Positions 36,935 through 56,030 of a DNA stretch of 64,000 nt are shown in pieces. The translations under genes were made by a program, and so were the position numbers. Under the pieces are notes generated by a model, which saw nothing but the letters and a program-made list of their open reading frames with translations, was not told where the DNA came from and did not search any database. Source of the DNA: Paraphysomonas bandaiensis (taxonomy: Eukaryota; Protista; Chrysophyceae); the NCBI GenBank assembly GCA_965644295.1, contig CBFFRP010000109.1, positions 1-64,000 of the forward strand. The letters are read 5' to 3'. How positions within the stretch are numbered: the stretch's first letter is position 1; each line of letters opens with the position of its first letter.

Positions 36935-39900
36935 TCATAAATTCTCGCCGGACGACCTGCTGTATAGTTCGTTGCGCTGAACTTCTTCTATTACTTCTTG
37001 AGAGTGAATAAACCCAATCCTTTCGGCCACATGACGAGCGCGGTCTTTCGTATCATCAAAATCGGCTATGCCACCGCTTTCCTGCTGAGTATAGTCATGA
37101 GAATCTGAGATGCGATCTAATGATTCCGATCCGGCAATACTGGAATGATAAGATTGCCGCTGTGCAAAAGATGCAAATGAATCAAACCACTCGTCCATTG
37201 GATTTTCAGCTAAGTTTCTATCAAACTCAATGGCATCGTACTGGAATCCTGTCAACTTGAGAGAAGAGTGATCTGCATTATTCATGCAGCGCCAGTAAAA
37301 ATCTTTTCTGTCTACTTCTTTCTCTTGTTGCAGGCCCACTGGCTCGAGATAAATAACATTCTTTCTTCTCAAATCATCAATATTAATTTCCATATCATCA
37401 TCTGGTATGTTGACTATATTATGAAACAATTTGGTCTTGACAATATAAAAGAAAAATATCGCTGCAGCGGCACATATCAAACAGAATGCCACTAACAGCC
37501 CTGGAGACACAGCTTCGAGTACATTGCAAAAAAGCAGCAGACAGCACAAGAATACCGGTATCGTTATATCAAGAGCTGACTGTTGTAGTACTTCATTGAA
37601 GCCACTCATCAATGATGGAAAGAACAGCAAAATATATGCAACGTAACCAATATCCCATGCTCGGACAAGCCTTCGAAGACGGCAAATGGTAATATCGCCA
37701 TCATCCAATAATTGCAGAATTTTTGATGCTGTTAGGTGGCTTAAGGGAGGATATCTGCTCGCTCTACAAGCTGCAGATATATGTTGAACAGCTCTGACAT
37801 CAGCTGAAGTATAACCATGCATCATTCTAGTTTGCATGACATTCCGTAAAACATCGTAGACATTCCTTATTTGAGGTCGTATCTTGTCAACGACCATTAC
37901 GTCGAGAACAAAAATCTGCACAACTTCATTCAACAAACAGTCTGTTAATATTATAACAACGATGACCACACCCCATGCATTGGATACAGTGTTGCCATTT
38001 GTCAGTGCCCAATTCAATGACCAATAAGCCATGAATATCCAGCACAAAAACAAAGCCAACCAACTTCCAATCCATTTGTAACTGATTATTCGGCCAGGAA
38101 CAGAAGAATCCATGTTAAACAAACCACGTTTCGCCGCAAACCTACAAATAGGCGAGAGTTGTTCCAACAAGAATTCCTGCAGCAAAATGAGGTCTTGGTA
38201 GTCAGTTTGTCCAGGCGCAATTTGGAACTCGGAAGTCGTCATATCAAGAACGCAGCGAGCCCGCTTACGGACGTATGAGATCCTGTACACCATTTTGTCT
38301 AATGGCGACGCAAATCGAAACTTTTCCCAAAATGACAATGGAACAGGGGTCCCATCTGCACAAATGCCCATCCAGCGCATTATCGCACCCATAAGTACCA
38401 ATTGTCTGCCACCTGCAGTGGCTGCAACCTCTTCAGTTTGCTCGCGCCATGGTAGTGGTACTATTTCAAGAGTAGAATTGAAGAATTCTTTCGCGGCAGC
38501 AATCAACACGTTTACTTCTTCATCATTTGAAAGAGTGTCGCAGTACGCTAGTCGGTATGGTACTGCAATCTCACTTCTGTTAGATACGGATCTTGCACCA
38601 CCCTCCACATCAGAGGCAATCTCTGACCTATCATTATTACTAATCAGATCAGAAACAGACTTGCTAAATAGGTTTTGGTGTTCCCACACAGTTGGCTCAC
38701 GACTAAGTAAGTAGGATGCCAAATTTCCGCCAACGATTGGGCGTTTAGCGCATATTTGCTCAAGAATAAACTGTACAAACCTTCTGAACGGCATGCTGAA
38801 GACGATAATAATCATAGCAACAGTCACTATAAACTCGAGGGTAAATGGTGGTGGTTTTAACGTACACTTGGGTACACTTGAATCCCACTCACACAGGTTA
38901 TCACCCAGACGGAATGCTGACATTTCATTCAGACATTTCTGCTGAGTGCGTTGGTTTTCGCATAGATTATCATCAGGATAAAAGACACTGAAAAATATCG
39001 CACAAGCAAATATTATGCTTAATACATCGCTGCACACGACAGCAAAGCGAATAACGCGTGGTTTATGCATGGAGGGGTAAGTGAAAATTCGTGCCCACCT
39101 ATGATGGCGTTTTATTGCCGCAATAAACTTATGCCACCATGTGTTGCATTGTAGCAGAGAAGTAGGAGGGAAATCATACTTGTTCAGCTGTTCTGAGGCA
39201 TTCGAAGATCTACTTTTAGTTGATTTGCCAAGTGTAATATCACCCTGATGCACAATAGACCCATAATTGCTATCGTCTTCCTTTTCAATTTCTGGACGAG
39301 AATCAGAAGAATTAGAGCCATGGACTGATTCAGCATCATCCAAAAGTTGTACAGAATCCGATGACACATTAGCCGCGACACCACGCTGGTCAAAAACAGC
39401 AGTCAAATTAAATTTCAAGTTTCGGTTCTCAATATCTTGACTTCTCATGTATATAAATATATTTCTGTCCAAGGCATCCCAGCAGTACAAGACAACAAAT
39501 CCCGCAACCATAAGTAGGAGAATAGCAGCAATTGTACTAACCCCCGATATACTTTGCTGTGCAGATATATTCTCTGTACTTCTAATATTCGAACCAGGCG
39601 CAATCTCCCGTGAGCGAATCGTGTAGAAAGTTGACGACTTTTGTTCTGTTTGCAAGTGTCTTCCAGGATAATTCGCAAAATATTTTTGTGATAAGGCCCG
39701 CTTTGAAGTAGCTACCACATCCACTGGACAAAAAAATTCAAGAGAATTTCTACATGTCATTGATACATTAGTTGCTGATTTTGAAGAGATAGTGCATGAA
39801 TCACATTCCGCAAGAGTTTCACCCGGGAGGTCATACTGATAGCACACAGGCTCGTGAGAAAGCAAATTCATCTCCGATGAAAATATCATATTCACATAGT

Positions 39901-42900
39901 ACGGCTCAGAGTTAGCTGCTTCATCAACCAAACTGTGAGTTTCAGCAGTTGCTATAGTTGCAACACTGAAAAACGGTGCTACTAGCTCCAAATCAGTTGT
40001 ATCAAACGGTGAAAATCCCCATGAACTCACAATAATTTTGGCATACTGGTCAAAACTGGGACACTCACTAAATCCATTAGCAGGTAGAATAAACGAAGAC
40101 GAGGGGGAGCCGTACGCAATCTCCTCATCAGTCTGCGGGGAACTCAGCTGAAAACCCTGAAGATCAGTTAATAAGTCATACCTAAAGGTGAGGCGCAAGT
40201 TTGGTGAAGTAATAGTGGACGGGGCTTGGCCAGGAATTAAATCAGCCTCAATATTAACGCGGAATGCATTCAATGCCTCATATATGATCTCTGAAATAGT
40301 ATCAAGCTCTTGTGACTGTACAAACTCTGATAAAACCTCTGCAACCTGAGTTTCTATGTGATCAGACTCACTGTCAGCTGAAGTTACTTGTAGTTCACTG
40401 GACAAAGCTCTCAGCGCACTAGCACATAACTCTGATGATCGAACAGAAAGTACCTCATCAAAATTGTAAAACTCAAGAAGCATTTGAGATAACACATCAA
40501 GCTTTTGAGTGCTTGGGCCCATATAATACGACATATTCAAAAGGCCATGACACAGATCACCACGAGCACTATCTCTTGCATGAATCTCTTCCTGAGTTAG
40601 ACTGCAATCCCCCCCTCCAAAACCAGTAAAGCAAGTGCACTTCGCAATACATTCCGTATTTTCAACTGTACAGCTTGAGCCGAATTCGTTATACCGATGG
40701 TCGAAATACTGACACTGACCCTGTCCGGAACACTGAGTCCCATCGTACTTACTGACAGGACATGATTTAAATGGAGCTGTACATATTCCAGCATCACAAA
40801 CACCATAACGACAATCACTATTCAACACGCAAGACTCGCCAGAAATTGCTCCGGCATCTGTACACGCAAAATTCGAATCACCATAAACTCCATCGAAACT
40901 ATCCAAACAAGGACCACAAGTATGACTAGTGTGGAGGCAACTTTCTCTGTTCAGAGCAGAACAGTTTGGTGCCAACGTACAATTAGCTCTTTCCGCCAGA
41001 CCAAGGACATTCACAGCCCCCGATAACAAATCCTGGGCCCCCTCGGTGTCGAAGATATCCGTGAATTCCAATGCCTTAATGATGGCTGGAATTATATCAG
41101 CAAATACGAATGATTCCAGATCCATGGATCGCGAAGCTAAATCCTTGACACCTCTTGCCAAACGTCGTCCCACACCTGCATCGCCGTATATATCGAATAT
41201 ATCACGTTCGCTAAAAGATGACTGGACTACCTCTTCATCTATAGCACCCGAACCCCATATATCTCTCACAATAACAGCACAAGCAACTGAATCACTTTTT
41301 GACGAGAGACCTTCGGGTAATTTAGTGTATTTATACTGAATCTGGCTGGCCGTACTGGCTTTCAGAGTTGCGGTATTTTCGTCAAAAGTATCACCAATTT
41401 GATATAGAAAGTGGAAAGACAAAGGGTAGTCGTCAGTGTTATCTTCCCAGTTAAAAGCTGCAAAGTAATAATCTGTCAGGTATGCTCTTCCTGATAATGG
41501 TGTAACGGACAGGTAACCGCTGGAGGGAGGTGTGTTTGGAGTAACTGATAATTCAGTGTAATACACTGAGTTACTTGAATCAGTAATCGTCAGGCGGAAT
41601 GTGTATGTCACTCCGCCTGTAAGAGTGTTTTCGTAAAGTGAAAGTGGGAACAGAACACCACTGGAAGCTTGTGAAAAAGTGAAATCCCGCTTCAAAGCGC
41701 CCAAACTGGCAGATTCCAATGACAGCTGATTAGACGATACAAGTGACCACTCTGCATGAACTCCACTCGGGTCATCAGATTGCACTGTAGTTTCAACAAC
41801 TAACTTTGAATCAGGATCAACTACAGGAGGCAATTCGTTTATCACAGAAATATCACTTGTTCGATTAGATGATTCAGCATTGACCAGCAGACTCGTGGAA
41901 CTCTTTCTCGTGATACCTGCAACTGTGGAGGACACCGTCAATGCAAATGAGTAGGAATATGTTGCGGTAAGAGTATTAGCCAGCAGTGTAATTTTACTGG
42001 AGGCTATTTCTGCATTAGAAAATGAACTCAAACAATCTTGGCCGAAGTAGGTTGCAGACACGACAGAACAATCCCAGCTATACATCAGTGACGACGAATC
42101 TCCATTCAGGTCACTGTCAAAGGAGAGGGAGCCATCAAGGACGATATCTTTGTTAACAGCAGATTGAATAGAATTCTCACCAATACTATTTATCACCGCA
42201 GTCACACCGCCACGTTTAATATATAACCTGAATGATGCAGTTGACGTTTCTTGCACATTATCATACTTTCCTGTCACAGCAACTGCTACCGTGTAGGTGT
42301 TCCCAACTTCAAAGGTGTATGCAGCAACAGAAAATACACTTGGATTAGTACTGCTGGATAAAATCGATTGTGCTTTCCCTCCTTGTAACACTTCCCAGCT
42401 GTACGTATAATCAGCAGCCACCTTCGACGTTACACCAGCACTGCATATTGACATCGACACAGAAGTTGCCTTCGACAGCGTCATTGATCTCAGCATCGAC
42501 ACATAGTTGGAGCCAGCAATGCTGACAGCTAAAGCCGGCTCCTCTGATAACACCTCTACACGCACAGTCTTGTATGCAGTTGAGCTTTGGAGAAAGTTGC
42601 GTGTTCCTAAGCTGATAAAAAAAGTAGTTTGACGTAATAATGAAGAGGATATCGTAATCAATTTTGTCGTATCATTGTATGATCGTAGTATATTTAGAAT
42701 GGCGCTTGTATCCCCACCGTCCACTGCTGATACCTTCCAATCAATACCCGCCCACATTCTTCCCGCTCGGCCAGTTGACTGTGTGGCGTCAATAGTTAAA
42801 TTTTGGCAGCTGCTGATTTGAGCAGGAACTTTTAGTACGACATTTGCTTCTATAATTCCAGAACCAGTAGCTACGAGTGATGTGTCTCCACTGGAGTACG

Positions 42901-45900
42901 GGTTATTGCAATTACCAGAGACACATGCTGTACGAATGACACCAGGATTCAGAGACAGTGTATCACCAGGAACTAGAGCATTAGCTGCCGGGGTAGTTCC
43001 ATAATGATTGAGTGTTACAATAATTACAGAAGAGTTAGACCAACGACAAGATGCATCATCAACACCATTGAACGAAAATACAAGGTTACATCGCCAAATA
43101 TCTCGTTGTCCACTCAATGCAACAGCCGCTTTGTCAGTAGCAGAGCTGAAATATATCCAAACTGTCTGACCTGCGTATCCGAATACACTGCGCCTTATCG
43201 TAGGAGCTGCATTGGTAACTGCTGAAGGCACGACATCAACAGAAGTATTCGTAAACGAATCGTCGTATTGAGGCTGCCCACTCCCGGTGACATTGAGTTT
43301 AACGTAGACTACTCCACTGGATCCAAAAATTAGAAAGGACTTTTGAAGAATTAAAGATTCCGATGAAAATGAAATTTTGATAGGCCTAGAAAATACCCCT
43401 GCTTGTACAGTGCTGTGGTCTGCGTCGCTATAAAAATGAGGTGTCACAGTAATTTCTGTCCCACTTGCAGGGGCAGACGACAACGAAAACTGCAACAAAT
43501 GGTCATTGAGAGTTGACTGAGACAACCCAGAATATGAACTCAACTCTGAATAAGCATAAACAGGTTTTCTGGTGACCTCAATAGAGTGGCAGCATTGTGT
43601 TGTATAAAAAAATTCTGTTGCTAATGCATCACGATAAGTTCCAACGTTGCCCAAGGAATCCTCTGCATAACTATAGATGAAATAAGTTTGAAACGGTTGT
43701 AAGCCATCAATCTCAATAGTAAAATCTGTGAAGTCGTCCGCTGTTGTAAATTCTGCAGGTGCAACATGAGATAAACCCTGGACTTTGATATCATCTACAT
43801 TTGTGAATTGTGATGGATCTTCGAAAGCACCAAAATATATTATTCCTCCATAAGGTGTAGTTGACACATTGACTGTCACTGCAACAGTCCCTGCTCTTCT
43901 GGTTTCAGCACTTACCGATTGAACAACAGGAATTGTACCCTCCGCAGGGATATAACTTGTGGGAACTAAAGTGGGCAAAACTGGGTGTCGCGTCGTGCCC
44001 AATCTTGTGGGAGTAACAGAAGGCGATGATGTTGGTCGACGTGTCGGGGTTCTAGTTGGAGTAGTGGTGACCATGTGATTTGGAAATGGAGTTGGGCGAT
44101 GAGTGGGTACTAATGTGAAAGCAGCAGCACTGGTCGGGGAAGAAGAAGTAGTCGAGGGGGCAATTGATATATCATTCGTTGGAGACTTCGTGGGAATACA
44201 AGTCGAAGCAATTCTCGAAGGTGCTATTGTTGGAAGATTTATGTCGCCTACAGATGTTGGGATATTTGTATTCGGTCGACTACTTGGTATTGCACTCGGC
44301 GTCATAGTGGGTGTACTGGTAGGCTCGACAGACGGTGAAATCGTCGGAAACAAACTGGGGGCTATGGTTGCTGGTGTACCTGTTGGTACGACTGTTGGGA
44401 GCACTGTGGGTGCATTCGTGTCGCCTACAGATGTTGGGATATTTGTATTCGGTCGACTACTTGGTATTGCACTCGGCGTCATAGTGGGTGTACTGGTAGG
44501 TTCGACAGACGGTGAAATCGTCGGAAACAAACTGGGGGCTATGGTTGCTGGTGTACCTGTTGGTACGACTGTTGGGAGCACTGTGGGTACATTCGTGTCG
44601 CCTACAGATGTTGGGATATTTGTATTCGGTCGACTACTTGGTATTGCACTCGGCGTCATAATGGGTGTACTGGTAGGTTCGACAGACGGTGAAATCGTCG
44701 GAAACAAACTGGGGGCTATGGTTGCTGGTGTACCTGTTGGTACGACTGTTGGGAGCACTGTGGGTGCATTCGTGTCGCCTACAGATGTTGGGATATTTGT
44801 ATTCGGTCGACTACTTGGTATTGCACTCGGCGTCATAATGGGTGTACTGGTAGGTTCGACAGACGGTGAAATCGTCGGAAACAAACTGGGGGCTATGGTT
44901 GCTGGTGTACCTGTTGGTACGACTGTTGGGAGCACTGTGGGTGCATTCGTGTCGCCTACAGATGTTGGGATATTTGTATTCGGTCGACTACTTGGTATTG
45001 CACTCGGCGTCATAATGGGTGTACTGGTAGGTTCGACAGACGGTGAAATCGTCGGAAACAAACTGGGGGCTATGGTTGCTGGTGTACCTGTTGGTACGAC
45101 TGTTGGGAGCACTGTGGGTACATTCGTGTCGCCTACAGATGTTGGGATATTTGTATTCGGTCGACTACTTGGTATTGCACTCGGCGTCATAATGGGTGTA
45201 CTGGTAGGTTCGACAGACGGTGAAATCGTCGGAAACAAACTGGGGGCTATGGTTGCTGGTGTACCTGTTGGTACGACTGTTGGGAGCACTGTGGGTGCAT
45301 TCGTGTCGCCTACAGATGTTGGGATATTTGTATTCGGTCGACTACTTGGTATTGCACTCGGCGTCATAGTGGGTGTACTGGTAGGTTCGACAGACGGTGA
45401 AATCGTCGGAAACAAACTGGGGGCTATGGTTGCTGGTGTACCTGTTGGTACGACTGTTGGGAGCACTGTGGGTGCATTCGTGTCGCCTACAGATGTTGGG
45501 ATATTTGTATTCGGTCGACTACTTGGTATTGCACTCGGCGTCATAATGGGTGTACTGGTAGGTTCGACAGACGGTGAAATCGTCGGAAACAAACTGGGGG
45601 CTATGGTTGCTGGTGTACCTGTTGGTACGACTGTTGGGAGCACTGTGGGTGCATTCGTGTCGCCTACAGATGTTGGGATATTTGTATTCGGTCGACTACT
45701 TGGTATTGCACTCGGCGTCATAATGGGTGTACTGGTAGGTTCGACAGACGGTGAAATCGTCGGAAACAAACTGGGGGCTATGGTTGCTGGTGTACCTGTT
45801 GGTACGACTGTTGGGAGCACTGTGGGTACATTCGTGTCGCCTACAGATGTTGGGATATTTGTATTCGGTCGACTACTTGGTATTGCACTCGGCGTCATAA

Positions 45901-48900
45901 TGGGTGTACTGGTAGGTTCGACAGACGGTGAAATCGTCGGAAACAAACTGGGGGCTATGGTTGCTGGTGTACCTGTTGGTACGACTGTTGGGAGCACTGT
46001 GGGTGCATTCGTGTCGCCTACAGATGTTGGGATATTTGTATTCGGTCGACTACTTGGTATTGCACTCGGCGTCATAGTGGGTGTACTGGTAGGTTCGACA
46101 GACGGTGAAATCGTCGGAAACAAACTGGGGGAAAGCGCAAAATCATTTGTTGGAGAATGAGTAGGGGGATTAGTCGTATCAGTAGACGTCGGACACAAGT
46201 CAAGTTCAGGTTCTACGACGAGGTTTAAATTGTCCTTTTCAATCAAGCACTGTGCAACACAATCGAAATTGTTTCTATTACTTGATGACGCAGATGAATC
46301 GTGCGCTATCAGTGTTTGAAGCGGAAGATCACAGAGGGAAGCAGGAATCTGGCCTCTGTAGCCATTACTACTGATATCTAAGTATGTCAACGACCACATT
46401 AACGAAAATATCCCGAAAGAATTGTCGACGAAGTCACTCTGGAGTCTTCTGACTTGAGTTTGATCCAGAGATAACACCCGCCGAGATGACATTCCGAAGC
46501 GGTTGCCCTGTAAATATAAGGTTCGGAGATTCGCCAGTTGACCGAGTTCTTGTGGTATCGGTCCAGCCAAATCATTAGACGAAAAATCTATCACGGTGAG
46601 ATGAGAAAGAGATCCTGTTCTTGACGGAATCGTTCCAGTTAGGCCAAGACCATTTAAAACCAAGCCAATAATATGGCCATCCTCATCACAATTCATACCA
46701 GTCCAATTATCCTGGCAAACAGTGTTGTTATTTGATGTTATCGGATCACCATTGCTATCACATGTCCAGCCATTTACAGAATACTCTGACAGTGACAAAG
46801 CGCTGGTGATATCGCAAAGAGCACCTCCTATATTAATCGTTGGTACAGCAGTTGGGGATTTAGAAGGAGACGAAGTCATCATGCGACTTGGACTCATAGT
46901 TGATGTGCTGGTGGGTTCAATTGAAAGATAACTAGTGGGGTACAGACTCGGATTCGATAATATTGACGGCAACGACGTCGGGATTGGACTTGGTAAAATA
47001 ACCGTACTATGGGTTGGGTGTAGCGTAGGAGCTGATGTTGGAATGGATGTATCGAGGTCTGTTCCTGGGCGATCATTGCATACATCGGAAATGGTTTTAA
47101 GCCTCAAGGGTCTGCAAATTGAATCTATAATAGAAAAGAAGAGCTCTTGTGAAGCTGCTCCAATAACACCACAAAAATTCCAAGTTATATTAGCGGTGTG
47201 AGGATATAATAGCCCAGTGACTCTGAAACTATACTCGCCATCAACCAAGCACGTATTGCATTCCGACGATCCGTCATCAGCAACGTCGGCAGCAGCACTC
47301 CACGGAATTCCAAATGCTTGGATTTCACCTTTGCTCAAGATGTCTGAAATAAACCAACCAGCGTTGCTATATTCATTGACAACTGCACTGGTGTTTGCGC
47401 TAATGACAGTACCATAAGTTTCAACAACCAAACCAGTACAAGCACCACTATCCGATGCCTGTATTCCACATGTATTACTTTCTTCGGGAGTGACCCACAG
47501 GTTGTCCCACCACACCAAGCTGTACAAACTGCTTACCGCAGAGTAATCAAACACCAAACTTGTATTGTAGCCACCATAGTATATATCCTGTGCAACACCA
47601 TCCAGAACAAATTGCACATCCCATTGCACCTCCCAGTAGTAGTCGGGAGCTAAATCGTCTGTATTGTGAAGTGACTTCAAAGTTAAATGGTACGAGTGGT
47701 CTTCATGTGAATAATAGTTCGGAAGGCAACCACTCAATACAGTGAGGTTACACGACGAAAGGGATATACTTGAAGTTTGATTACTATCATTTAAATTCCC
47801 AATTTCAAGTGAATAGTACAAACTGATTCTAGGGTCCCAACCGTCACCAAAGGTATCACGTATAGTGATGTATAAACATGTGTCATTTTCGCCAAGTGGA
47901 AATAACTCATTCGATGTCGGGCCCAGAGTTGGCGTTGAAGTTGGAACAGGAGTCGTCGGTATAACAGTCGGGTGCGATGACGGGATATATTCTATCTGCG
48001 GAGTAAAAACAGCCATACACACAAAGCAAGACGGCTCAAAAACCTGTGTGCCGACTGCTAAAGTGAAAACATCTTCGGGGGTGGAATGGGTGGTTTCTTC
48101 ATCCACGCACTGATCCTCCTGGGTAATGATGCTCGCACCAGTCGTAGTGCGATCAAATGCACGTAAACCAGTTGAGTCAGTCAAACTGGTAGAGCTACCG
48201 ACGATACCATAAATGCCTGGAGGAAGTATATATGTATATTGAAAATCAATCAACCGCCTTACATTCGTCACGTCATTGAATACAGCAGTCTCAAATGACA
48301 AGCCTTCCACACAACTTAACGATACCCCACCAGAAAAGGACATATATGACAGTGTCTCAGCAGCTTCATTCATCACATAATATGATTCATCCGTCGAATC
48401 ATGGGGTTGCAAAACAGCACGGAAAAATCGAAGACCAACATTACGGGTACGTGGAATCAATAGCCGATCATATACCAAAGTCTGGAGCTGAAGTATCACT
48501 CCAACAATCGTACCAGTAGGATACGCACAATAGAGTGTTGAAGATTCACATCCCGTCGGAAAATTAAATCTGACAAAATTAGCGTCGTTGGTCGGGTCGC
48601 TATCTTGTCTGGTAATTGGTCCACTACCAACCATGAAAAAACTTCCAGACAAATTGTACGCACCATGCTCAACAACTAACCATGATAACGATAATGGAGG
48701 AGATATTGGCACAGGAACTGCCCACTCTTTGGAACAGAAACTGTCGTTGGCTTGATAGATTCGAGTTTCAAAACTGACTCTGCCCAAAGACGTTACAACA
48801 TTCCGAACTCGGGCTATGGCAGGAAAACCCTCAGATGAAGTATCACCCGGAATATTAGGAAGACTAACAAACACACTTGCATTCATAAACGAGTTTACAG

Positions 48901-51900
48901 TAGTCGTCACTGTGACCCATTCCTGGTCATCTACTCCAGCGAAACCTCCCTCAAGCCAAATAGATGCAATTGGTTCTTTGGTTATTATATTGTGTATATT
49001 TCTTTCAGTGCTGTTGTTATCGGGGCATAATGCTGTTGGAGTTGTACTAGGAACCTCAGTTGCTAGTCGAGAAGCCTCAGATGTCGGAGAAGTTGTCGGG
49101 AGAATTGAAGGACTATGAGTACCACCGATGGAGGGGGACGTTGACGGAGAGTGAACTGTTTGAGGAGTAAACAGTGCCATACAAATGGTGCATGAATCAT
49201 CCTGTACATCTTCCCCAACCACTAAAGTAAACACAACTTCCGCAGTAGTATGAGCGGTTTCCTCGTCTACGCATTGGTCTTCTTGAATAATAATACTAGC
49301 ACCAGTCGAGGACCGATCAAACGCACGCAAACCAGTTGAATCAGCTAAACTAATTGCACTACCGACTATACCAAATATACCAGGAGCCATGGTGTACCTG
49401 TACTTGAAATCAATGTGCCGATTACTATCAGTAACACCATCAAATATTGCCCCCTCCAGTGTTAGTCCTTCAACACAACTTATGGCAACACCATCCGCAA
49501 ATGAAAAATACGCTAATGTTTCGGCTGTCTCATTCATTACATAGTACGACGGGTCTGACGAATCGTGTGGCTGCAAAACAGCTCGGAAGAAACGACGACC
49601 CACCAATAGAGTGCGAGGTATTAACAAACGGTCATATACCAAAGTCTGCAACTGCAAAACCACTCCAGCATCTACACCATCTGGGTACGCACAGAATATA
49701 GTAGACGACTCGCAGCCTGCAGGGAAATTGAAACGAATAAAATTGTTATCGTTAGTAACATCTTCGTTTTCACGAGTGATCGGGCCTGAGCCAACAACAA
49801 ACATATTGTTTGACACGTTATACACACCATGCTCAGCTACAAGCCACGACAGTGTCATTGGTGGATAAATAGGCTGTGGAATCGCCCACTCTTTTGAACA
49901 GAAACTGTCATTTGCTTGATAAATACGTGTCTCGAAAGTAACTGATCCAGTTGTCTGCACATTTCTAACTCTAGCGATCGCAGGGAACCCATCTGAAGGT
50001 GAATCGCCAGGTATATTAGGAAGACTCACAAATACACTAGCATTTCGGAAATTGGTCAATACCGTTGTCACGGTAACCCATTCCTGGTCATCAACACCAG
50101 CGTAACCACCTTCTAACCAAAGATCCGAAACTCCGTGTTTTGTAACCATGTCTACGACATTTGTACTGGAATTTGAAATTCGAGGACACAAAGGTGTTGG
50201 AATCGAAGTTGGGGAAGTAGGAGCCCATGTCGAGGTTGGTGCAACCGAAAGAGTAGGTGAAATCGAAGGTGAAGAAGATGAAGGCTTAAACGAAGGAGAA
50301 CTTGATGGCATATGAGTTGGCTGCGAAGTTATCACTGCACCCTCAGGACTAAACACAGCATTGCACACAAGACATGAAACTGAATCCGCCCTTTCACCAA
50401 CTGCTAAAGTGAAAACATCTTCGGGGGTGGAATGGGTGGTTTCTTCATCCACGCACTGATCCTCCTGGGTAATGATGCTCGCACCAGTCGTAGTGCGATC
50501 AAATGCACGTAAACCAGTTGAGTCAGTCAAACTGGTAGAGCTACCGACGATACCATAAATGCCTGGAGGAAGTATATATGTATATTGAAAATCAATCAAC
50601 CGCCTTACATTCGTCACGTCATTGAATACAGCAGTCTCAAATGACAAGCCTTCCACACAACTTAACGATACCCCACCAGAAAAGGACATATATGACAGTG
50701 TCTCAGCAGCTTCATTCATCACATAATATGATTCATCCGTCGAATCATGGGGTTGCAAAACAGCACGGAAAAATCGAAGACCAACATTACGGGTACGTGG
50801 AATCAATAGCCGATCATATACCAAAGTCTGGAGCTGAAGTATCACTCCAACAATCGTACCAGTAGGATACGCACAATAGAGTGTTGAAGATTCACATCCC
50901 GTCGGAAAATTAAATCTGACAAAATTAGCGTCGTTGGTCGGGTCGCTATCTTGTCTGGTAATTGGTCCACTACCAACCATGAAAAAACTTCCAGACAAAT
51001 TGTACGCACCATGCTCAACAACTAACCATGATAACGATAATGGAGGAGATATTGGCTCAGGAACTGCCCACTCTTTGGAACAGAAACTGTCGTTGGCTTG
51101 ATAGATTCGAGTTTCAAAACTGACTCTGCCCGAAGACGTTACAACATTCCGAACTCGGGCTATGGCAGGAAAACCCTCAGATGAAGTATCACCCGGAATA
51201 TTAGGAAGACTAACAAACACACTTGCATTCATAAACGAGTTTACAGTAGTCGTCACTGTGACCCATTCCTGGTCATCTACTCCAGCGAAACCTCCCTCAA
51301 GCCAAATAGATGTGACTTCTTCTTTCGTCACCAAATTGAATAAATCTCCTGCTTCCTTAGTACCACAAGACGAATTTACGATAGTAGGTAATGATGACCC
51401 TGCTGTGCTAGTAAACGTAGGAGACACTGTCGGAAACAGACTGGGGGAGGGGGTCTGGTCACTAGTGGCAGCAAATGACGGCACAAGGGTAGGTAACACG
51501 GATGGTGTACATGTCGGGGACGAGGTGGGGAAAATAGACGGAGAAGCTGTAGGAGAATTAGATAGGTGCTCACTTGGAGCGAGAGTTGGTAGACTTGTGG
51601 GGTGTAATGTTGTTGACAGCACTGTCGGCATCGAAGTTGTCGGTAATGAAGTTGGCAACTTAGTCAAGTTATCAACCGGCCCTGCTCCTGTGGGCAGAGT
51701 TGTTGGGGAAAGACTGTTTATTTCCGTGGGAAAGGAGGTTGTCAGTGCAGTAGTGGGTAATAACGTCGGGCCCGTTGTTGGTAAACCAGACGGCGACAAA
51801 GTGAAAGATACTGTTGGCAAGCTCGACGGGGTAAACGTGGGAGAAATGGACGGGCAACGTGAGGGGCTTACACTTGGATTCATAGTAGGACTCATGCTGG

Positions 51901-54900
51901 GTTGATTAGTTGGCAGAGTCGAAAGCGAGGGTGAAATCGTAGGGCTTGAAGACTCCCGAGTAAACACTGTGCGGCAAACTATACATGATGATACTTCATC
52001 CTGCTCACCTACAACAAATGTAAAGACCGTCTCCTTAGTCGTGTGAGTTGTCTCCTCATCCACGCACTGATCCTCCTGGGTAATGATACTTGCACCAGTC
52101 GTAGTGCGATCAAATGCACGTAAACCAGTTGAGTCAGTCAAACTGGTAGAGCTACCGACGATGCCATAAATGCCGGGGGGGGCAGAAAATGTAAACTGAA
52201 AATCAATCAACCGCCTTACATTCGTCACGTCATTGAATACAGCAGTCTCCAGGGACAAACCGGATACACAACTTAACGATACCCCACCAGAAAAGGACAT
52301 ATATGACAGTGTCTCAGCAGCTTCATTCATCACATAATATGATTCATCCGTCGAATCATGGGGTTGCAAAACAGCACGGAAAAATCGAAGACCAACATTA
52401 CGGGTACGTGGAATCAATAGCCGATCATATACCAAAGTCTGGAGCTGAAGTATCACTCCAACAATCGTACCAGTAGGATACGCACAATAGAGTGTTGAAG
52501 ATTCACATCCCGTCGGAAAATTAAATCTGACAAAATTAGCGTCGTTGGTCGGGTCGCTATCTTGTCTGGTAATTGGTCCACTACCAACCATGAAAAAACT
52601 TCCAGACAAATTGTACGCACCATGCTCAACAACTAACCATGATAACGATAATGGAGGAGATATTGGCTCAGGAACTGCCCACTCTTTGGAACAGAAACTG
52701 TCGTTGGCTTGATAGATTCGAGTTTCAAAACTGACTCTGCCCAAAGACGTTACAACATTCCGAACTCGGGCTATGGCAGGAAAACCCTCAGATGAAGTAT
52801 CACCCGGAATATTAGGAAGACTAACAAACACACTTGCATTCATAAACGAGTTTACAGTAGTCGTCACTGTGACCCATTCCTGGTCATCTACTCCAGCGAA
52901 ACCTCCCTCAAGCCAAATAGATGTGACTTCTTCTTTCGTCACCAAATTGAATAAATCTCCTGCTTCCTTAGTACCACAAGACGAATTTACGATAGTAGGT
53001 AATGATGACCCTGCTGTGCTAGTAAACGTAGGAGACACTGTCGGAAACAGACTGGGGGAGGGGGTCTGGTCACTAGTGGCAGCAAATGACGGCACAAGGG
53101 TAGGTAACACGGATGGTGTACATGTCGGGGACGAGGTGGGGAAAATAGACGGAGAAGCTGTAGGAGAATTAGATAGGTGCTCACTTGGAGCGAGAGTTGG
53201 TAGACTTGTGGGGTGTAATGTTGTTGACAGCACTGTCGGCATCGAAGTTGTCGGTAATGAAGTTGGCAACTTAGTCAAGTTATCAACCGGCCCTGCTCCT
53301 GTGGGCAGAGTTGTTGGGGAAAGACTGTTTATTTCCGTGGGAAAGGAGGTTGTCAGTGCAGTAGTGGGTAATAACGTCGGGCCCGTTGTTGGTAAACCAG
53401 ACGGCGACAAAGTGAAAGATACTGTTGGCAAGCTCGACGGGGTAAACGTGGGAGAAATGGACGGGCAACGTGAGGGGCTTACACTTGGATTCATAGTAGG
53501 ACTCATGCTGGGTTGATTAGTTGGCAGAGTCGAAAGCGAGGGTGAAATCGTAGGGCTTGAAGACTCCCGAGTAAACACTGTGCGGCAAACTATACATGAT
53601 GATACTTCATCCTGCTCACCTACAACAAATGTAAAGACCGTCTCCTTAGTCGTGTGAGTTGTCTCCTCATCCACGCACTGATCCTCCTGGGTAATGATAC
53701 TTGCACCAGTCGTAGTGCGATCAAATGCACGTAAACCAGTTGAGTCAGTCAAACTGGTAGAGCTACCGACGATGCCATAAATGCCGGGGGGCAGAAAATG
53801 TAAACTGAAAATCAATCAACCGCCTTACATTCGTCACGTCATTGAATACAGCAGTCTCCAGGGACAAACCGGATACACAACTTAACGATACCCCACCAGA
53901 AAAGGACATATATGACAGTGTCTCAGCAGCTTCATTCATCACATAATATGATTCATCCGTCGAATCATGGGGTTGCAAAACAGCACGGAAAAATCGAAGA
54001 CCAACATTACGGGTACGTGGAATCAATAGCCGATCATATACCAAAGTCTGGAGCTGAAGTATCACTCCAACAATCGTACCAGTAGGATACGCACAATAGA
54101 GTGTTGAAGATTCACATCCCGTCGGAAAATTAAATCTGACAAAATTAGCGTCGTTGGTCGGGTCGCTATCTTGTCTGGTAATTGGTCCACTACCAACCAT
54201 GAAAAAACTTCCAGACAAATTGTACGCACCATGCTCAACAACTAACCATGATAACGATAATGGAGGAGATATTGGCTCAGGAACTGCCCACTCTTTGGAA
54301 CAGAAACTGTCGTTGGCTTGATAGATTCGAGTTTCAAAACTGACTCTGCCCGAAGACGTTACAACATTCCGAACTCGGGCTATGGCAGGAAAACCCTCAG
54401 ATGAAGTATCACCCGGAATATTAGGAAGACTAACAAACACACTTGCATTCATAAACGAGTTTACAGTAGTCGTCACTGTGACCCATTCCTGGTCATCTAC
54501 TCCAGCGAAACCTCCCTCAAGCCAAATAGATGTGACTTCTTCTTTCGTCACCAAATTGAATAAATCTCCTGCTTCCTTAGTACCACAAGACGAATTTACG
54601 ATAGTAGGTAATGATGACCCTGCTGTGCTAGTAAACGTAGGAGACACTGTCGGAAACAGACTGGGGGAGGGGGTCTGGTCACTAGTGACAGCAAATGACG
54701 GCACAAGGGTAGGTAACACGGATGGTGTACATGTCGGGGACGAGGTGGGGAAAATAGACGGAGAAGCTGTAGGAGAATTAGATAGGTGCTCACTTGGAGC
54801 GAGAGTTGGTAGAATGGTTGGCACGGAAGACTGTCCACTTGTTGGACGCGCTGAGGGTGATAACATTGGAGGTCCAGTTGGGATATGGAACACTGGGGGA

Positions 54901-56030
54901 AAGTATGACGCCTTGCATACTGTACATGAATAGGATTCACTCTGCTCACCCACAACAAAAGTAAACACCGTTTCCATTGTCGTATGGTTAGTTTCCGCAT
55001 CCACACATTGGTCCTCCTGAGTGATGATACTTGCACCAGAAGTTGTACGATTAAATGCACGCAAACCAGTTGAATCAGCTAAACTAGTTGCACTACCGAC
55101 TATACCAAATATACCAGGAGCCATGGTGTACCTGTACTTGAAATCAATGTGCCGATTACTATCAGTAACACCATCAAATATTGCCCCCTCCAGTGTTAGT
55201 CCTTCAACACAACTTATGGCAACACCATCCGCAAATGAAAAATACGCTAATGTTTCGGCTGTCTCATTCATTACATAGTACGACGGGTCTGACGAATCGT
55301 GTGGCTGCAAAACAGCTCGGAAGAAACGACGACCCACCAATAGAGTGCGAGGTATTAACAAACGGTCATATACCAAAGTCTGCAACTGCAAAACCACTCC
55401 AGCATCTACACCATCTGGGTACGCACAGAATATAGTAGACGACTCGCAGCCTGCAGGGAAATTGAAACGAATAAAATTGTTATCGTTAGTAACATCTTCG
55501 TTTTCACGAGTGATCGGGCCTGAGTCAACAACAAACATATTGTTTGACACGTTATACACACCATGCTCAGCTACAAGCCACGACAGTGTCATTGGTGGAT
55601 AAATAGGCTGTGGAATCGCCCACTCTTTTGAACAGAAACTGTCATTTGCTTGATAAATACGTGTCTCGAAAGTAACTGATCCAGTTGTCTGCACATTTCT
55701 AACTCTAGCGATCGCAGGGAACCCATCTGAAGGTGAATCGCCAGGTATATTAGGAAGACTCACAAATACACTAGCATTTCGGAAATTGGTCAATACCGTT
55801 GTCACGGTAACCCATTCCTGGTCATCTGCACTAACGAAGCCGCTCTCAATCCAATTATCTCGTACGGGAAGCTTAGCAACCATGTCTATGACATCTGTGT
55901 GGTTGGTGTCTACTGGAGGACATAATGGGCTACTTGACGGAGAGAGAGTGGGTGCTTCAGTTGCAATAGTTAGTGTACTTACAGCAGTGAGCATCAGTAC
56001 GGCTGCAAAGGCGGAAGTGGTCATCGCCAT
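36935..56030 (-). CDS. Giant (~6365 aa) intronless polycystin-1/REJ-like multi-pass receptor; the 755-aa and 5626-aa ORFs are one gene split by a 2-nt homopolymer difference at 53786-53791
   Basis: Signal peptide; six ~330-aa repeats; LRRNT+LRR (WTGMNC...LTGTIP...LAGPIPQELGQL); P/T/S stalk; REJ motifs (LDGSLSFD..YSWDC, NTPPSSG.LSVTP..WED..DYPL); EGF (CSGQGQC..CTCFTGFGGGDC); GPS-like cysteines; TM1 then HHRWARIF..PRVIRF and further TM helices. Confidence 0.88.
44243..46130 (-). repeat. Coding tandem array, 177 bp (59 aa) x ~10.7, mucin-like
   Basis: Unit starts every 177 bp (44243, 44420, 44597 ... 46013); units differ almost only at T/I and A/V sites. Confidence 0.97.
48005..55880 (-). repeat. 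Six ~1-kb coding domain repeats (types B,A,A,A,B,A), including a 1611-bp tandem period
   Basis: Matching shadow ORFs start at 51162, 52773 and 54382 (periods 1611 and 1609); pairs 48295/50641 and 49447/55181 are near-identical. Confidence 0.95.

What the first reader, a model, noticed from the sequence alone, without database searches (positions are those of the whole stretch)
48005..55880. ~330-aa repeat unit is itself three modules resembling bacterial H-type-lectin/MshQ-like domains: possible HGT-derived single-chain pseudo-trimer
Seen: each unit holds three ~110-aa sub-repeats (WVTV..F.N..VFVS..ARVRNV...FETRI..LSWLVVEHG; F.FP..VILQLQT..R..F...LQP..ETLSYM; IDF.Y...PPGIYG..LR...A.I..QEDQC.D.ET.H..E.V). 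From my recollection of the family: W..V.F...F..P.V..RVRNVT..GF and EE...D.E..H..E motifs occur in bacterial surface proteins such as MshQ-like pilus-tip adhesins, and H-type lectins are trimeric. Inference: up to 18 binding modules, possibly of bacterial origin, with added cysteines.
Basis: partly seen in the sequence, partly recalled or inferred. Interest (0 to 1): 0.75.

Follow-up and report, generated by a model that had tools for sequence, protein, structure and literature searches.

The report
Single-chain triple H-type-lectin heads
Each of the six repeated ~315-residue "beads" at the outer end of this giant protist surface receptor is three fused, diverged H-type-lectin-like beta-sandwiches; this three-part layout is shared with many bacterial secreted proteins, and the heads probably act as sugar-recognising sites, though binding is untested.

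Summary
Six units lie on the minus strand at 48014-55853, sharing 71-99% identity. Each is three ~100-residue six-stranded beta modules (A-B-C).

No Pfam or NCBIfam model sees the protist unit. Full-database phmmer links it (E 3e-12 to 1e-8) to prokaryotic proteins with the same A-B-C unit, and 26 of 29 of those units match Pfam H_lectin. Profile comparison pairs each protist module with the bacterial module in the same position (A 2e-16, B 2e-6, C 9e-14).

Only module C keeps the full prokaryotic Arg/acid/His signature, so about 6 canonical sites is likelier than 18. Seven added cysteines per unit are confirmed.

The host genome is Paraphysomonas, a prey-eating chrysophyte, and holds at least 87 such units. 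Prokaryote-to-protist transfer is plausible, but no donor is resolved. The MshQ link is unsupported. Earlier notes of this scan reached the same reading on paralogous genes of this genome.

The parts
54915..55853 (-). Unit U1 (A-B-C triple module, subtype 1)
   Evidence: It is 92% identical to U5 and 71-72% to the others.
53582..54524 (-). Unit U2 (subtype 2), broken in module C by a 2-nt shortfall in a C run at 53786-53791
   Evidence: It is 99% identical to U3 apart from the break.
51971..52915 (-). Unit U3, the reference unit used for searches and folding (query window:51896-52930:-)
52595..52921 (-). U3 module A (unit residues 4-112). It keeps Arg55. It has lost the His/Glu of the prokaryotic motif and gained an N-D-x-x-C insert.
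   Evidence: (A vs bacterial A, 2.3e-16).
52265..52594 (-). U3 module B (residues 113-222). Arg175 and Glu206 are kept, P-H-D replaces E-E-E, and there is an inserted Cys142/Cys149 loop.
51995..52264 (-). U3 module C (residues 223-312). It keeps the full conserved signature: D266, R271, E286, D287, D291, E293, H296, E300.
50360..51304 (-). Unit U4 (subtype 2)
49181..50119 (-). Unit U5 (subtype 1)
48014..48958 (-). Unit U6 (subtype 2)
53786..53791 (-). C6 homopolymer (G6 on the + strand) where sister unit U3 has C8. It splits the reading frame into a 755-aa ORF and a 5626-aa ORF.
36935..56030 (-). The whole gene that carries the heads. In order: signal-peptide-like start (by eye, not run through a predictor), six heads on PT-rich linkers, a Cys-rich domain, LRR, a 59-aa x 10.7 PT stalk, a REJ domain, and C-terminal hydrophobic stretches that look like membrane spans (by eye).
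   Evidence: REJ 3.8e-32; LRR_8/LRR_1.

Best explanation
Each unit is one rigid head built from three homologous six-stranded beta-sandwich modules of the H-type-lectin superfamily (A-B-C), fused in one chain. The modules probably pack round a pseudo-threefold axis, so one polypeptide mimics the homotrimer that free H-type lectins and phage or pyocin fibre knobs form.

The same A-B-C supradomain is a common accessory module of prokaryotic secreted enzymes and adhesins. It usually occurs as one copy per protein, often at the extreme C-terminus.

The protist version is a derived, disulfide-stabilised subfamily. Module C keeps the ancestral Arg/acid/His site residues, B keeps part of them, and A has lost most. 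Each head therefore probably offers one principal ligand groove at a module interface, perhaps two.

Six heads are strung on mucin-like PT linkers at the distal end of a roughly 6,400-residue LRR/REJ membrane protein. Together they would give multivalent, avidity-based recognition of surface glycans. In a phagotrophic Paraphysomonas these are most likely glycans of prey or particles.

Shown: the repeat anatomy, homology to Pfam H_lectin-positive prokaryotic units, position-by-position module correspondence, and confident compact models.
Inferred: threefold packing, ligand type, location of the site, biological role, and prokaryotic origin.
For: - Anatomy and repeat identity.
- Link to prokaryotic proteins: phmmer over 1.84 billion representatives gave 226 hits. 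Most span the whole unit. They include P0128 (3e-12), P0139 (6e-10; its cluster includes a Desulfoplanes formicivorans GDSL esterase) and P0150 (1.4e-8), all with Pfam H_lectin above the gathering score.
- Pfam on prokaryotic units: 26 of 29 hit H_lectin, best E 5e-15, and one hits Gp53-like_C.
- hhalign: bacterial modules match each other at 1e-13 to 2e-16. Protist A~A is 2e-16, B~B 2e-6 and C~C 9e-14, with P0150 removed from the protist profiles.
- AF2: pLDDT 91.7 and pTM 0.89 for the window unit; 95.3 and 0.91 for the Leptolyngbya unit. Both show six strands x 3 with no low-confidence stretch between the modules.
- Fold search, single modules: fibre knobs and all solved H-type lectins head the lists.
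- Fold search, whole unit: only single-chain threefold assemblies align over 145-210 residues. These are sc-adiponectin, Cbln1 C1q, sc-APRIL/BAFF, herpesvirus dUTPase and the PCSK9 C-terminal domain.
- Binding sites of H-type lectins lie at trimer interfaces (PMC6048534).
- Prokaryotic partner domains are beta-helix glycanase-like domains, CBM96, S8 peptidase, GDSL esterase, RTX, PilY1 and T9SS tails.
- Site-residue retention differs by module.
- The genome holds at least 87 units.
- The genome is Paraphysomonas.
Against: - No Pfam or NCBIfam model hits the protist unit itself.
- The three protist modules are not significantly alike by themselves.
- I had no model coordinates, so threefold symmetry was not measured.
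- Sugar binding is untested. CofB shows that an H-lectin trimer groove can be repurposed for a peptide ligand.
- Two of the three modules have lost signature residues.
- The gene is frame-broken in U2 in this assembly.
Confidence: 0.7

Rival explanations
1. The heads have the H-lectin fold but are not sugar binders. They would bind a protein or peptide partner, as CofB binds CofJ, or serve only as rigid disulfide-locked spacers that project the receptor through the scale or mucilage layer.
For: CofB's H-lectin trimer groove binds a peptide and not GalNAc. Modules A and B have lost most ancestral polar residues. The seven added cysteines suggest selection for rigidity.
Against: Module C keeps eight conserved polar residues shared with prokaryotic units, at 63-100% conservation in the protist clade. 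Prokaryotic units sit beside glycan-active domains and a CBM. The at least 87 diversified copies look like a recognition repertoire.
Confidence: 0.2
2. The protist family was not acquired from prokaryotes. Either it is vertically inherited from an early eukaryote and lost elsewhere, or the transfer ran from eukaryote to bacteria.
For: In the unit tree the protist and prokaryote units form a clean two-way split on a long branch, with no protist unit inside a bacterial lineage. The paralogue-rooted sister groups for modules A and C contradict each other, and B is unresolved. H_lectin domains in general occur in several eukaryote groups (literature list).
Against: The A-B-C unit was found in at least 10 prokaryotic phyla including archaea. 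For eukaryotes I can only document a stramenopile lineage. Prokaryotic modules keep the ancestral mutual similarity, while protist modules are derived, with inserts, cysteines and lost motif residues. Paralogue rooting places the protist clade inside prokaryotes for A (support 80/50) and C (98).
Confidence: 0.3
3. The three modules are beads on a string, not a compact pseudo-trimer.
Against: pTM is 0.89-0.91 for the whole chain, and pLDDT stays at 92-98 across the module junctions. In most of the 46 prokaryote loci one ORF holds exactly one complete A-B-C set, never a lone A or B. The A-B-C order is conserved between domains of life. Whole-unit alignments of 145-210 residues exist only to compact threefold single chains.
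Confidence: 0.1

Closest known systems
H-type lectins (Pfam PF09458): Helix pomatia/aspersa agglutinins, discoidin I/II C-terminal domain, coral SLL-2
   Different: Here the three copies are fused in one chain and have diverged, so the head is asymmetric. The protist version is invisible to PF09458, carries seven extra cysteines and module-specific inserts, and has lost site residues in modules A and B.
R-type pyocin fibre foot and phage AP22 gp53 / LKA1 gp49 / phi297 gp61 C-terminal knobs (Pfam Gp53-like_C, PF21882)
   Different: Those knobs are homotrimers of one domain per chain at the end of a trimeric fibre. This is a monomeric three-in-one head.
Type IVb minor pilins CofB / TcpB (H-type lectin domain at the pilus tip)
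   Different: CofB is a homotrimer, not a single chain, and its ligand is a peptide. No sequence relationship was detected.
PCSK9 C-terminal (Cys/His-rich) domain
   Different: TM-scores are only 0.24-0.41 and E-values about 1e-2. There is no sequence evidence, so this may be convergence.

Membership tests
Pfam H_lectin (PF09458) | Significant match of the sequence itself to the family HMM | tested here: not met
   The window unit, the 755-aa ORF and 26 protist-type homologues gave no H_lectin hit, even at E up to 0.1-1. None of the 41 word-search relatives has a precomputed Pfam domain.
Pfam H_lectin (PF09458) | Demonstrable homology to sequences that pass the family model | tested here: met
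   phmmer gives E 3e-12, 6e-10 and 1.4e-8 to P0128, P0139 and P0150, all above the H_lectin gathering score. 26 of 29 prokaryotic units hit H_lectin. hhalign pairs each protist module with its bacterial counterpart at 2e-16, 2e-6 and 9e-14.
Pfam H_lectin (PF09458) | Six-stranded antiparallel beta-sandwich superposable on solved H-type lectins | tested here: met
Pfam H_lectin (PF09458) | Threefold assembly with ligand sites at the interfaces between domains | tested here: inconclusive
Pfam H_lectin (PF09458) | Binding of GalNAc-type or other sugars | not testable with these tools
   This needs a glycan array or ITC. The only indirect evidence is the conserved module-C polar signature and glycan-active partner domains in prokaryotes.
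MshQ (MSHA pilus biogenesis protein) | Sequence match to an MshQ family model or a reference MshQ protein | tested here: inconclusive
NCBIfam gave no hit of any kind for the window unit or for 29 prokaryotic units. I had no reference MshQ sequence and do not know whether the library holds an MshQ model.
Gp53-like_C fibre knob (PF21882) | Match to the family HMM and fold | tested here: inconclusive
PCSK9 C-terminal domain | Three-module quasi-threefold single-chain fold with detectable homology | tested here: inconclusive

The most novel reading that the evidence does not exclude
The A-B-C triple H-lectin unit would be an ancient, widespread 'trimer-in-one-chain' supradomain that lets monomeric secreted proteins carry the receptor-binding knob of trimeric phage and pyocin fibres. 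A bacterivorous chrysophyte lineage would have captured it from prokaryotes and expanded it into roughly ninety heads on giant REJ/LRR receptors, as a prey-glycan recognition repertoire. The PCSK9 C-terminal domain might be a remote descendant of the same S8-peptidase-plus-triple-module architecture.
Probability: 0.2. Interest if true: 0.8.

Novelty: new variant of a known kind. Interest (0 to 1): 0.55.

Why it matters
H-type lectins are known as homotrimers. A natural single-chain pseudo-trimer, conserved from archaea and bacteria to a protist, would be a new architectural solution. It allows the three sites to diverge, as seen here: C intact, B altered, A degenerate.

The protist subfamily is invisible to current domain databases, yet it fills at least 87 heads in giant receptor genes of one small grazer genome. 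It is therefore probably a main determinant of what this ecologically important bacterivore recognises.

It also offers a compact, monomeric lectin scaffold for glycan tools. And it is a concrete candidate case of prey-to-predator gene transfer.

Tried and rejected
- Direct Pfam and NCBIfam scans of the unit found nothing useful; the only hits were noise such as DprA_N and DotA.
- Pairwise BLAST of the three protist modules was not significant. Protist-only profile comparisons gave P 0.02-0.3. The internal repeat could only be shown through bacterial intermediates and structure.
- Profile searches of PDB sequences with A2 and A4 returned only low-complexity PT matches and a spurious 2-oxoglutarate enzyme hit. 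No solved relative exists by sequence.
- Foldseek found no match at E <= 1e-3 for either model.
- My first assumption, that the window is from a diatom, was rejected. A Paraphysomonas MMETSP1103 protein matches this genome at 97-99%. The only diatom hint is one member of an ESM-Atlas cluster.
- Taxon names for the protist-type hits were largely unavailable.
- Donor identification failed. Module A groups protists with a Leptolyngbya-type cyanobacterial clade, while module C puts that clade furthest away.
- Literature searches found no description of a tandem or single-chain H-type lectin trimer, or of H-type lectins in diatoms. A search for a PCSK9/Helix pomatia structural link gave nothing.
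- An endosymbiotic (plastid) origin was considered because of the many cyanobacterial hits. It is not favoured: the locus scan was seeded with cyanobacteria-like patterns, and the tree gives no cyanobacterial sister with consistent support.
Full report
**What is there.** The minus strand of the window carries one giant open frame. A 755-aa ORF (53763-56030) starts with a signal-peptide-like sequence. It runs into a 5626-aa ORF (36935-53815). The two are separated only by a C6 run at 53786-53791, where the 99%-identical sister unit has C8.

The N-terminal third holds six repeats of a 313-317-residue core, from W-[LI]-E-x-G to C-x-x-C:
- U1 54915-55853
- U2 53582-54524
- U3 51971-52915
- U4 50360-51304
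- U5 49181-50119
- U6 48014-48958

The repeats are separated by PT-rich linkers. They fall into two subtypes, U1/U5 and U2/U3/U4/U6. Identity is 92-99% within a subtype and 71-72% between them. The coordinates and the repeat are therefore confirmed.

**Databases do not know the unit.** Pfam and NCBIfam give nothing for the unit. Nothing is found for 26 protist-type homologues either, and none of 41 word-search relatives has a precomputed Pfam domain. An ESM-Atlas look-up gave a eukaryotic PT-rich cluster first (0.93). Bacterial H_lectin clusters followed at 0.89 and 0.88, which is a lead only.

**Homologues.** I ran phmmer against 1.84 billion representatives. It found 226 proteins at E <= 1e-3, 78 of them at E <= 1e-30, and most align over the whole 3-module unit. 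Nearly all carry the same cysteines and PT linkers.

Three distant hits are of prokaryotic type, cysteine-free or cysteine-poor:
- P0128 (E 3e-12)
- P0139 (E 6e-10); its 90% cluster includes the Desulfoplanes formicivorans GDSL esterase WP_083254587.1
- P0150 (E 1.4e-8)

All three pass Pfam H_lectin above the gathering score. A unit HMM finds two, six and one-and-a-half complete A-B-C units in them.

A scan of GTDB species genomes returned 46 loci. Many are marine cyanobacteria. Others are Paracoccaceae, Bacteroidota, Spirochaetia, Aquificota, Myxococcota, Verrucomicrobiota, Syntrophobacter and haloarchaea. Most ORFs hold exactly one complete A-B-C unit, often ending within a few residues of the stop codon. 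Of 29 such units, 26 match H_lectin (best E 5e-15) and one matches the phage Gp53-like_C knob.

**Three modules.**
- Direct comparison of the protist modules is not significant. This holds for BLAST and for protist-only hhalign, P 0.02-0.3.
- In the prokaryotic units the three ~90-residue modules are plainly alike: hhalign 1.4e-16 (A/B), 1.3e-13 (A/C) and 2e-16 (B/C).
- With P0150 removed from the protist profiles, each protist module matches best the bacterial module at the same position: A-A 2.3e-16, B-B 2.1e-6, C-C 8.6e-14.

So the unit is a triplication of one H-lectin-type module. The A-B-C arrangement is older than the split between the prokaryotic and protist forms.

**Structure.**
- AlphaFold2 on alignment A2 gives pLDDT 91.7 and pTM 0.89 for U3. 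It shows six strands three times over, and pLDDT stays at 92-98 across the module junctions.
- The Leptolyngbya PCC 7375 unit gives 95.3 and 0.91 with the same pattern.
- Foldseek finds nothing at E <= 1e-3.
- Together with the high pTM this supports a compact pseudo-threefold head. I had no coordinates and could not measure the symmetry.

**Site residues.** An alignment of 61 protist-type and 51 prokaryotic units was examined column by column.
- The prokaryotic signature repeats in each module: Pro...Arg...Phe...acidic cluster...His-x-x-Glu.
- Module C of the protist units keeps all of it: D266, R271, E286, D287, D291, E293, H296 and E300, at 63-100% conservation.
- Module B keeps R175 and E206. 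It has P-H-D in place of E-E-E and has lost the His.
- Module A keeps only R55 (R77%/K19%). It has lost the His and Glu and gained an invariant N-D-x-x-C insert.
- Six of the seven cysteine positions (80, 142, 149, 221, 289, 319) are 83-100% conserved in the protist clade and essentially absent from the prokaryotic units (at most 1-2% at two columns). Position 316 did not reach the screen's 80% threshold.

In H-type lectins the ligand sits in the groove between neighbouring domains of the trimer (PMC6048534). The protist head is therefore likely asymmetric, with one canonical groove and perhaps a second altered one. About 6 to 12 sites in this protein is more realistic than 18.

**Context and host.** Downstream of the heads lie a Cys-rich domain, LRRs, a 177-nt x 10.7 tandem PT stalk, a REJ domain (3.8e-32) and C-terminal hydrophobic stretches that look like membrane spans (by eye).

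The genome is 62.6 Mb in 669 contigs. It holds at least 87 unit matches spread over many giant open frames. A Paraphysomonas MMETSP1103 protein (P0152, TAXON_ID 36769) matches contig C159 at 97-99%. The host is therefore a Paraphysomonas, a colourless phagotrophic chrysophyte, and not a diatom as I first assumed.

In prokaryotes the unit accompanies these partner domains:
- beta-helix glycanase-like domains, G8/CEMIP, CBM96 and PKD
- glucose/sorbosone dehydrogenase
- CAP
- S8 peptidase
- GDSL esterase
- RTX repeats
- PilY1
- Chlam_PMP repeats
- T9SS tails

That is the behaviour of a carbohydrate-binding or adhesive accessory module.

**Origin.**
- In an ML tree of 112 units, the 61 protist-type units form one clan (SH-aLRT 100). 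A branch of about 2.1 substitutions per site separates them from all 51 prokaryotic units, and no specific sister is resolved.
- I then rooted each module subtree with the other two modules (192 modules, 89 columns, quick search).
  - Module A: the protist clade falls inside the prokaryotes with support 80/50.
  - Module C: it falls inside with support 98.
  - Module B is unresolved.
  - The two supported sister groups contradict each other.
- Two further points favour transfer from a prokaryote into a stramenopile ancestor. The unit is spread over at least 10 prokaryotic phyla, and the protist modules are in a derived state.
- This is not proven. The donor is unknown, and the eukaryotic range beyond Paraphysomonas is poorly documented; there is only one diatom hint.

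**MshQ.** No NCBIfam model of any kind matched, so the MshQ comparison remains a recollection. The real pilus parallels are the CofB/TcpB H-lectin tip domains and a Syntrophobacter PilY1-domain protein that carries the unit.

**Earlier notes of this scan.** Notes on paralogous genes of the same genome (s1-456038, s1-440764, s1-439169) reached the same triple-H-lectin reading. They also named Paraphysomonas as the host. I re-derived both points independently here. The finding is thus not new within the scan. I found no paper describing it.

**Limits.**
- U2 was read across its break only with X, in a local identity table.

Noticed in passing
window 53786-53791 (vs 52175-52182): A C6 homopolymer on the coding strand sits where the 99%-identical sister unit has C8. 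It splits the gene into a 755-aa secreted-looking ORF and a 5626-aa ORF. It could be a homopolymer assembly error, a pseudogene lesion or a real truncation.
   Followed up: partly
window 44242-46131: A 177-nt tandem repeat, 10.7 copies at 99% identity, encodes a 59-aa PT-rich stalk repeat. The long antisense ORF 44103-46160 (+) is probably just a by-product of this repeat.
   Followed up: no
window about 47066-47893 (-): A Cys-rich domain with a 'FGDGW' motif directly follows the sixth head. A similar stretch follows the unit in hits P0058 and P0043. No Pfam hit.
   Followed up: no
L005:1804-4152:+ (Hydrococcus sp. MAG): A Peptidase_S8 domain (85-355) is followed by one triple H-lectin unit (396-686). 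This is the same order as the subtilase plus three-module C-terminal domain in PCSK9, which is the only natural whole-unit Foldseek match (prob 0.89-0.96, TM 0.24-0.41). It may be remote homology or convergence.
   Followed up: partly
L045:719-4561:+ (Syntrophobacter MAG): The unit (252-543) occurs in a protein with a PilY1 beta-propeller domain (1053-1214).
   Followed up: no
L013, L023, L036 (cyanobacterial and Bacteroidota loci): A right-handed beta-helix, pectate-lyase-like or G8/CEMIP domain is followed by a C-terminal triple unit. This echoes phage tailspikes (beta-helix depolymerase plus lectin-like knob), but as a monomer with a three-in-one knob.
   Followed up: no
G000 contigs C376, C543, C36, C66, C319, C183, C380, C417, C169 and others: At least 87 unit matches lie in many open frames of 2,000-5,700 aa. 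Some are in near-identical tandem arrays: six copies of ~1,260 nt on C380, and ~1,390-nt periods on C319. This is a large, recently expanding gene family.
   Followed up: partly
G000:C159:95692-97179: The Paraphysomonas MMETSP1103 transcript protein P0152 matches here at 97-99% in three pieces separated by short gaps, with in-frame stops at the piece ends. This fits a gene with small introns. It fixes the host genus.
   Followed up: partly
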